A stretch of 64,000 nt of DNA, from NCBI RefSeq assembly GCF_035594765.1, contig NC_085842.1, forward strand, positions 30,232,782 through 30,296,781, in the 5' to 3' direction. The notes beneath the pieces were generated by a model. The model was not told the origin of the DNA. It did not search any database and saw only the letters and a list, made by a program, of their open reading frames with translations. A program made the position numbers and the translations under genes. The stretch's first letter is position 1, and every line of letters begins with the position of its first letter. This DNA comes from Anolis carolinensis (lineage: Eukaryota). Positions 3,541-5,036 of the stretch are shown one piece after another.

Positions 3541-5036
3541 CCACTTCTGGCGAACTCTGCCCAATAGCGCATGATTCTATGGCTCAATGCAGCCTCAGCT
3601 TCTGTATACGTTTTGTTGACCGCCACAGCCAACTCAAGGTGACCAAATACATATGGTAGTTCAGCACCATGAGGAGCACCAAACCACTCAGGGGAGGCTG
3701 AACCAGAAGTGTGGTGAGAGAAGATGTAAGCATACACAGGACTCCCAGCTTTTTGGACCGTTGCCGCATATTCAGCTAATGGGCACCAAAACCCATATTC
3801 ATTGACCATCTGAGTCATGGCTGACCGGTACTGTGCAGCACCCTGATGGTCTTCACTGTACTTCAGTGCCACAGCCTTCACATCTTCAGGACTCACATTG
3901 CGAATTGTCCTCTTTGCTATTTTCAGAAGTTGATCCCAAGAGATCAAGCCATCCTTGACATCAGGGTAGTAAAACGGCACAAAATGAGCTGTTTCATCCG
4001 AAGTGCCACCGAGCAGAATTGGTTTGACCTGGATGTGTCCTGACTGGAGTAGTTTTTGTGGGTCCTCAGGCAAAAAGTCCCCATCCGTGGTTGGTAAGAA
4101 TGGAACATCCAGAAGGAACTCCTGCATCTGCATCATAGCTAACTCCTGTTGACTAAATTCGGTTGCATTTTTTCCCTGAAGGCAGCGCAGTACAGCATTT
4201 TCATCCCTTTCCACACATCCCAGAAGCTGACTGAGAGCAAGGGTTTTCTGCTTAACCTCCTCAGGACGTTTCCATCCCCAGAGCACATTGGGAACTGCAC
4301 TCTGCAGGATAGCTTGGCTGAAAAGTGGCTGGCTTCTTGGAGAAAGGAGGTGCAAACCTACAGATACTGCCCCACCATTGTGGCCAAAAATGGTTATCTT
4401 ATTGGGATCTCCACTGAAAGCAGCTGCATTCTCCTTCACCCAGGTCAGTGCTAACTGTTGATCCAACAGGCCCATATTTCCTGGAATTGTTGGTGGCAAA
4501 TAAAGGAAGCCCAGAGGGCCCAGGCGGTAGTTGATGGAGGCCACAATGACCTTCTCTCTTGCAGCTAAGGAAGCTCCATTATATAATTTCATAGAACCTG
4601 AGCCAGAGGAAAATCCTCCCCCGCCATGGATCCAGACAAGAATGGGAATTGGTGTAGAGGGCTGTGGATGGGGCACCCAGATGTTGAGAAAGAGGCAGTC
4701 TTCTGACACAGGCCTGTTGAGAGCCCATGCCTTTGAATCAGGCGACTCTGGGTAAGTGATCTGGGAGCAGGCATTGCCAAAGTTGTTAGCCTCCAAGACT
4801 TGTCTCCAGGGCTGATGTGGACGAGGCTTCTGGAAACGCTGGTTCCCCAAGGGAGGCTCAGCATAAGGGATGCCCAGATAGGCCATCACAGGACTAGAGC
4901 TTTCTGAGAGAAGTTTCCCTTTAACGGGGCCACTCTTGGTGTTCACCACAGTGCCATCTCCAGTAGGAGAACTGGATGCCAAAGAAAAGAGGAGGAAGAG
5001 GAAACAGAAACCAGGAAAAGGAAGACCAAGCATCAT
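3541..5036 (-). CDS. Cholinesterase-like gene 1, large coding exon; catalytic Ser replaced by Asn (GHNGG)
   Basis: Signal peptide, LGIPYAEPP, SEDCLFLNIWVP, NYRLG, GAPHGAEL, YWAEFARSG. Acceptor tttcag at 5043-5042 precedes gccATG at 5036, so the ORF-track start at 5102 is intronic; gtaag donor at 3540. Confidence 0.93.

What the first reader, a model, noticed from the sequence alone, without database searches (positions are those of the whole stretch)
4371..4385. Gene 1 is a probable pseudoenzyme: GxSxG reads GHNGG in an intact ORF
Seen: codon 4379-4377 is AAT (Asn) where the paralogs have AGT (Ser). The oxyanion loop has an extra Gly (HGGGGF), and other conserved Gly motifs are altered (FSGDP, QSAV, DET). 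The ORF, splice sites, disulfide cysteines, acid (SDE), His (GAPHGAE) and omega-loop Trp (KAWAL, equivalent of the AChE choline-binding Trp) are retained. Known: Ser-less cholinesterase folds act as binding or adhesion modules (neuroligins, neurotactin, thyroglobulin ChEL domain). Inference: an independently evolved secreted ligand-binding or scavenger protein. Caveat: it is only one base from Ser.
Basis: partly seen in the sequence, partly recalled or inferred. Interest (0 to 1): 0.8.

Follow-up and report, generated by a model that had tools for sequence, protein, structure and literature searches.

The report
Conserved serine-less cholinesterase-like lizard protein
Green anoles and several other lizard families keep, under purifying selection, an expressed and probably secreted cholinesterase-like protein whose catalytic serine has become asparagine, so it most likely binds a molecule in its pocket instead of cutting it; the molecule is unknown.

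Summary
Confirmed and extended. Codon 4379-4377 is AAT (GHNGG) in an intact gene of the Anolis carolinensis cholinesterase-like cluster. Four runs from four studies show no other base there, and three of them give contigs cut at the exon boundaries (spliced). The change is not private: a second anole paralog, A. sagrei (2), Sceloporus, Phrynosoma, Pogona, Phrynocephalus and Elgaria (3, one with Asp) share it. All 11 also carry a one-residue insertion in the oxyanion loop, absent from 118 of 119 serine-bearing relatives. dN/dS is 0.27 on the gene 1 branch and 0.28 across the iguanian group (0.20 around the gorge), which rejects error and young pseudogene. After an anole duplication, replacements concentrated near the gorge. 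Best reading: an old, soluble, non-hydrolytic pocket-binding protein (0.6); partner-binding and non-canonical catalysis remain open. No activity, ligand or tissue is shown. It works like ABHD5 or the neuroligin ectodomain but belongs to neither. No paper found. The scan noted another dead paralog 158 kb away (unchecked).

The parts
3540..5043 (-). Large coding exon of gene 1 (ATG at 5036; residues 1-499 of RefSeq XP_008103824.1)
   Evidence: ORF; 100% match to P0001; contigs of three runs lie exactly on 3540-5043 and run on unlike the genome
4971..5036 (-). Probable signal peptide (hydrophobic N-terminus)
   Evidence: Only strongly hydrophobic 19-mer in the protein, mean 2.02; no dedicated predictor was available
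4725..4727 (-). Trp104, equivalent of BChE Trp82 / Torpedo Trp84 (choline-binding site)
   Evidence: Alignment to PDB cholinesterases; kept in 9 of 10 Asn/Asp proteins aligned
4611..4628 (-). Oxyanion loop with a one-residue insertion (HGGGGF)
   Evidence: 7-residue loop in 11/11 Asn/Asp proteins, 6 residues in 118/119 Ser proteins
4371..4385 (-). Nucleophile elbow GHNGG; Asn220 (AAT, 4379-4377) replaces the catalytic Ser
   Evidence: no variant in four runs; AAT/AAC/GAT in orthologs
3993..3995 (-). Glu348, triad acid, retained
3984..3986 (-). His351 at the BChE Ala328 / Torpedo Phe330 gorge position; gene 1-lineage replacement shared with A. sagrei
3669..3671 (-). His456, triad His, retained
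889..1047 (-). Next coding exon (residues 500-552), with Cys540
   Evidence: tblastn and splice sites
9996..16458 (.). Upstream non-coding DNA collinear with the upstream DNA of the Sceloporus and Phrynosoma Asn genes (orthology evidence)
   Evidence: blastn blocks of 67-78% identity in the same order

Best explanation
Gene 1 belongs to an old lizard subfamily of soluble, probably secreted cholinesterase-fold pseudoenzymes. It arose by tandem duplication inside the squamate cholinesterase-like cluster. It lost the nucleophile (Ser to Asn) and gained a residue in the oxyanion loop, so it cannot form the acyl-enzyme intermediate, but it kept the fold and a constrained gorge. It most likely binds a small molecule reversibly in the former active-site gorge, as a carrier, buffer or sponge, and the two anole copies have diverged in what they bind. 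Shown: sequence, transcription and splicing, conservation across lizard families, purifying selection, intact predicted fold. Inferred: secretion, loss of hydrolysis, ligand binding in the gorge, a single origin. Unknown: ligand and tissue.
For: Asn/Asp plus insertion in 11 proteins from 7 species. No variant at the codon, spliced contigs. dN/dS 0.27 on the gene 1 tip, LRT 22.6 against 1; 0.28 in the iguanian group, lower than the two Ser-bearing paralog tips at 0.51. Gorge-proximal codons dN/dS 0.20 against 0.28 elsewhere, so the pocket is not decaying. Between the anole duplicates, codons fixed in both species differ 12 times by replacement and once silently; 9 of 22 lineage-specific replacements lie within one residue of gorge anchors (57 of 470 sites, p=4e-4), while ortholog pairs show no such excess. 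AlphaFold2 model pLDDT 95, TM about 0.93 to AChE/BChE. No membrane anchor, hydrophobic tail, Trp-rich tail or C-terminal Cys. Precedent for Ser to Asn with Asp/His kept: ABHD5 (PMC9694394).
Against: No activity or binding data. Evidence for dN/dS above 1 on the duplicate stem is weak (p about 0.03) and one control fit did not converge. The enrichment test was run after the positions had been seen, although the anchors come mainly from a published table (PMC3045457). Gorge variation may be a general trait of the cluster (genes 2 and 3: 11 of 30, p=0.07). One RNA run carries a Gly465Asp variant at an otherwise invariant site. Tissue is hidden in the run records.
Confidence: 0.6

Rival explanations
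1. Non-catalytic, but working through its surface: it binds a protein partner or regulates active paralogs, as the neuroligin ectodomain or ABHD5 do; the gorge is kept for fold stability.
For: All known non-catalytic cholinesterase-fold proteins act on protein partners (PMC5943944); ABHD5 is a co-activator. Purifying selection covers the whole domain (0.28 outside the gorge). It sits beside Ser-bearing paralogs in every cluster seen.
Against: Replacements after duplication concentrate at gorge positions; no membrane anchor or oligomerisation tail; no partner known.
Confidence: 0.2
2. Still an enzyme, with different chemistry: the His-Glu dyad acts as a general base on water or substrate (lyase, dehydratase or slow hydrolase), Asn positions the substrate, and the inserted residue reshapes the oxyanion hole.
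For: His456 and Glu348 are kept in 11/11; the elbow is Asn in 10 and Asp in 1, never another residue; keeping Asn across Iguania has P=0.035 under neutrality. Alpha/beta hydrolase folds that use His as a base without a Ser nucleophile exist (own knowledge).
Against: At the protein's background dN/dS the same retention has P=0.36, so it is no more than ordinary constraint; ABHD5 also keeps Asp and His. A shifted serine is excluded for anoles: the next residue is Gly, and Ser there also occurs in normal Ser-bearing paralogs.
Confidence: 0.15
3. A dead duplicate drifting towards loss (expressed young pseudogene), or a sequencing error or rare allele.
For: One base from Ser; the cluster loses the nucleophile sporadically (Gekko Asn, Crotalus Cys, Thamnophis Gly singletons); the Phrynocephalus copy has a frame break near its 5' end in the assembly; gene 1 keeps slightly fewer family-conserved residues (0.925) than Ser paralogs (mean 0.968).
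Against: Reads; orthologs with synonymous AAT/AAC change at the codon; dN/dS far below 1 on the tip and the clade, LRT 22.6 and 270; open frames over a tree of total dS about 1.4-1.9.
Confidence: 0.05

Closest known systems
Acetylcholinesterase / butyrylcholinesterase (PF00135)
   Same: Fold (TM about 0.93), about 40% identity, three disulfides, omega-loop Trp, Glu and His of the triad.
   Different: No catalytic Ser, oxyanion loop one residue longer, omega loop three residues shorter, several gorge aromatics replaced, no tetramerisation or GPI tail.
Squamate cholinesterase-like tandem cluster (Ser-bearing paralogs)
   Same: Parent family: 50-64% identity, same large-exon structure, same cluster. 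Amplification in lepidosaurs is reported in Chatonnet et al. 2017 (recalled; paper not held).
   Different: 119 paralogs examined keep Ser; this subfamily has Asn/Asp plus the insertion.
Neuroligins, neurotactin, gliotactin, glutactin, thyroglobulin ChEL domain
   Same: Cholinesterase fold without a working triad (PMC5943944).
   Different: Independent and much younger origin; stand-alone soluble domain; no transmembrane segment or thyroglobulin repeats; gorge residues largely kept.
ABHD5 / CGI-58
   Same: Same substitution, Ser to Asn in GxSxG, with acid and His kept (PMC9694394).
   Different: Different alpha/beta hydrolase family; intracellular lipid-droplet co-activator; no homology claim beyond the fold.
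Poison-frog alkaloid-binding globulin and saxiphilin (plasma sponges)
   Same: Functional analogy only: a secreted protein from an old scaffold used for small-molecule binding (PMC10783871; PMC13376186).
   Different: Serpin and transferrin scaffolds; ligand shown there, unknown here.

Membership tests
Active cholinesterase / carboxylesterase | Type-B carboxylesterase fold (PF00135) | tested here: met
   Pfam 6e-134; model pLDDT 95, Foldseek TM 0.93
Active cholinesterase / carboxylesterase | Nucleophilic Ser in GxSxG | tested here: not met
   Asn, AAT
Active cholinesterase / carboxylesterase | Triad acid and His | tested here: met
   Glu348, His456
Active cholinesterase / carboxylesterase | Canonical oxyanion loop length | tested here: not met
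   One extra residue
Active cholinesterase / carboxylesterase | Ester hydrolysis | not testable with these tools
   Needs an assay
AChE/BChE proper | Trp-rich tetramerisation tail or GPI signal | tested here: not met
   Short hydrophilic tail, no Trp in the last 40 residues
Squamate cholinesterase-like cluster | Nested among squamate cholinesterase-like paralogs in a tandem array | tested here: met
   Trees; neighbours
Neuroligin-type adhesion proteins | Transmembrane segment and cytoplasmic tail | tested here: not met
   Hydropathy
Neuroligin-type adhesion proteins | Closest relatives are neuroligins | tested here: not met
   Top PDB sequence and structure hits are AChE/BChE
Pseudoenzyme (general) | Loss of an essential catalytic residue in a retained gene under purifying selection | tested here: met
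Pseudoenzyme (general) | Transcribed and spliced | tested here: met
   (RNA status of the runs is a guess in the records, but contigs stop at the exon ends and continue)
Pseudoenzyme (general) | Measured absence of catalysis and a non-catalytic function | not testable with these tools
   Needs an assay
Asn-type subfamily as one clade (Iguania + Anguidae) | Monophyly with the trait columns removed | tested here: inconclusive
   Three well-supported subclades in a polytomy; AU p=0.30 (protein) and 0.053 (DNA); adding the gecko Asn protein is rejected (p=0.0005)

The most novel reading that the evidence does not exclude
An undescribed vertebrate class of soluble cholinesterase-fold binding proteins, born once in the ancestor of iguanians and anguimorph lizards, that uses the disarmed gorge to bind small molecules such as dietary alkaloids, cholinesterase inhibitors or signalling lipids, with paralogs tuned to different ligands; or, less likely, an enzyme with a new Asn-His-Glu chemistry on this fold.
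Probability: 0.35. Interest if true: 0.8.

Novelty: new variant of a known kind. Interest (0 to 1): 0.57.

Why it matters
Known non-catalytic cholinesterase-fold proteins are ancient adhesion or chaperone domains far removed from their enzyme ancestors. This one is an independent vertebrate case still 50-64% identical to serine-bearing sisters in the same cluster, so the steps from enzyme to non-enzyme (two changes at the active site, then retuning of the gorge after duplication) can be tested directly. It also corrects annotation (RefSeq names these proteins cholinesterase and acetylcholinesterase) and could bear on how lizards handle cholinesterase-directed compounds.

Tried and rejected
Sequencing error or rare allele: rejected (orthologs). 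Young pseudogene: rejected. Shifted nucleophile at the next residue: rejected for anoles (Gly) and uninformative elsewhere. The FSGDP, QSAV and DET changes as a shared signature: rejected. Gecko Asn protein as a member: rejected. The single Ser-type protein with a longer loop (P0103) is a low-quality model whose gene has a frame break at that spot, so it is not a true exception. A first AlphaFold run on 12 sequences failed (pLDDT 45). Non-coding synteny could not be traced from pleurodonts to agamids or Elgaria. Nine literature searches on the family, its accessions and analogues found no description of this subfamily; Chatonnet et al. 2017 was not held and ESTHER could not be consulted. ESM Atlas gave only ordinary cholinesterase clusters. 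The N gap at 3128-3272 was left alone: reads were laid on 3300-9000 only, and gene 1 was not fetched from another assembly. I built no joined spliced model; window searches used the large exon by reference, and full-length work used the stored database protein P0001 by id.

Full report
Identity. The window is from the green anole: the open reading frame at 5036-3540 (minus strand) is 100% identical to residues 1-499 of Anolis carolinensis XP_008103824.1, named cholinesterase isoform X2. It is a type-B carboxylesterase domain (Pfam 6e-134), about 40% identical to AChE and BChE, and is one of three such genes in the window. The next coding exon is 1047-889 with canonical splice sites; the last exon is outside the window.

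The observation. Bases 4385-4371 encode GHNGG, with AAT at 4379-4377; genes 2 and 3 have AGT. Reads were laid on 3300-9000, avoiding the N gap. Four runs from four studies show no other letter at the codon. In three of them, contigs lie exactly on 3540-5043 and continue with sequence unlike the adjacent genome, with no depth in the unique flanking DNA: spliced transcripts. Tissue is not given and contig depth does not measure expression.

It is a subfamily, not a one-off. Among about 130 squamate relatives aligned, Asn stands at the elbow in a second A. carolinensis paralog, two A. sagrei genes, Sceloporus, Phrynosoma, Pogona, Phrynocephalus and two Elgaria genes; a third Elgaria gene has Asp. 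All 11 have a seven-residue oxyanion loop, against six residues in 118 of 119 Ser-bearing proteins; the exception is a low-quality model with a frame break at that spot. The Asn codon is AAT or AAC. Upstream non-coding DNA is collinear between the window, Sceloporus and Phrynosoma, which fixes orthology among pleurodonts. With the trait columns removed, trees give three strong subclades (pleurodonts, agamids, Elgaria) in an unresolved fork. One clade is neither supported nor rejected (AU p=0.30 protein; 0.053 DNA), whereas a gecko protein with Asn but no insertion is clearly separate (p=0.0005). A single origin is the simplest reading, because two rare changes co-occur every time, but Elgaria's Asn genes are closer at silent sites to an Elgaria Ser gene (dS 0.39) than to the agamid gene (0.79), so gene conversion or a second origin must be allowed. 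By recalled divergence times the state is at least 70-90 million years old (anoles and phrynosomatids) and about 150-170 million if single. None was found among the snake, lacertid, skink or cordylid proteins returned, which does not prove absence.

Selection. Pairwise dN/dS between Asn orthologs is 0.14-0.28. A codon model of my own (GY94, F3x4, not checked against codeml) gives 0.27 on the gene 1 tip (LRT 22.6 against 1), 0.28 across the iguanian group (LRT 270), 0.54 on the Elgaria tips (LRT 15.7) and 0.51 on two Ser-bearing tips. Codons within three residues of gorge anchors have 0.20 against 0.28 for the rest, so the former active site is not decaying. Retention of Asn, His and Glu is unlikely under neutrality (P about 0.04 each) but ordinary at the background rate (about 0.37), so it does not by itself imply chemistry.

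The anole duplicates. Gene 1 and its sister are present in both anole species. Codons fixed in both species differ 12 times by replacement and once silently; under a looser rule 22 sites separate gene 1 from the sister state. Using the gorge positions of PMC3045457 Table 1 plus triad and oxyanion residues, mapped through the BChE alignment, 9 of the 22 fall within one residue of an anchor (57 of 470 sites; p=4e-4), including His351 at the BChE Ala328 position and Val311 at the acyl pocket; ortholog pairs show no excess. The stem branch has dN/dS 4.6, different from background (LRT 25) but only weakly above 1 (p=0.03). The test was made after seeing the sites, one control fit did not converge, and genes 2 and 3 show a similar but non-significant trend, so this is suggestive only.

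Structure and location. There is one hydrophobic stretch, at the N-terminus, and a short polar tail without Trp or Cys: a soluble, probably secreted protein with four glycosylation sequons.

Mechanism. From established chemistry, Asn cannot form the acyl-enzyme intermediate, and an insertion among the glycines that donate the oxyanion hydrogen bonds should impair it further (inference). ABHD5 is the known case of the same substitution with acid and His kept (PMC9694394); neuroligins, neurotactin, gliotactin, glutactin and the thyroglobulin domain are the known non-catalytic cholinesterase folds (PMC5943944). Because the gorge stays constrained and is where the duplicates diverged, reversible ligand binding there is the best reading (0.6), ahead of surface partner binding (0.2), altered His-Glu catalysis (0.15) and drift (0.05). 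A sponge or carrier role, as for the poison-frog alkaloid-binding globulin (PMC10783871), is an analogy, not evidence.

Novelty. The cluster's amplification in lepidosaurs is recalled from Chatonnet et al. 2017, which I could not read; no paper on the Asn subfamily or its accessions was found. UniProt's automatic name for the two A. carolinensis proteins is only domain-containing protein, whereas many Ser paralogs are named hydrolase. The scan's own notes list another dead paralog 158 kb before this window, which I could not identify or check. Verdict: a real, conserved pseudoenzyme subfamily, a new variant of a known kind; function untested; interest 0.57.

Noticed in passing
window 3643 (run X13): One RNA contig carries a change that turns Gly465, invariant in the alignments, into Asp; allele frequency and effect unknown.
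   Followed up: no
window 4892 (run X15): Variant Pro49 to Ser, the residue found in the orthologs; the reference allele is the derived one.
   Followed up: partly
L006 about 10000-11524 (Elgaria, P0027): Paralog with Asp at the elbow (GHDSG) and Asp in the loop insertion (HGGDAF); reminiscent of Asp-nucleophile hydrolases, single case.
   Followed up: no
P0043 (Gekko kuhli), P0078 (Crotalus horridus), P0080 (Thamnophis elegans), P0156, P0178: Further, apparently independent losses of the elbow Ser (Asn, Cys, Gly, Gly, Gly) in relatives of the family.
   Followed up: partly
L009 9720-9890: The Phrynocephalus Asn gene has a frame break near its 5' end in the assembly; error or decay not determined.
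   Followed up: no
window 19326-20807 and 32585-34066 (minus): Genes 2 and 3: recent Ser-bearing duplicates (dS 0.10) that lack the omega-loop Trp and have HC instead of HG after the triad His; 11 of 30 differences near the gorge (p=0.07).
   Followed up: partly
window upstream of 5043: Contigs of X3 and X13 run on for 88 letters beyond the acceptor; this 5' exon was not placed. The RefSeq X1 upstream exon near 6850-6990 had no depth in the three RNA-like runs.
   Followed up: partly
window about 5517-5840 and 6296-6620: High-copy repeats upstream of gene 1 (very high depth in all runs); by recall a MITE and a Sauria SINE-like element.
   Followed up: no
window 22076-22819 and 22835-23856: Reverse-transcriptase-like fragment followed by a GC-rich tandem repeat.
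   Followed up: no
P0311: A Ser-bearing relative is on record from Vipera anatolica senliki; tissue source not checked.
   Followed up: no
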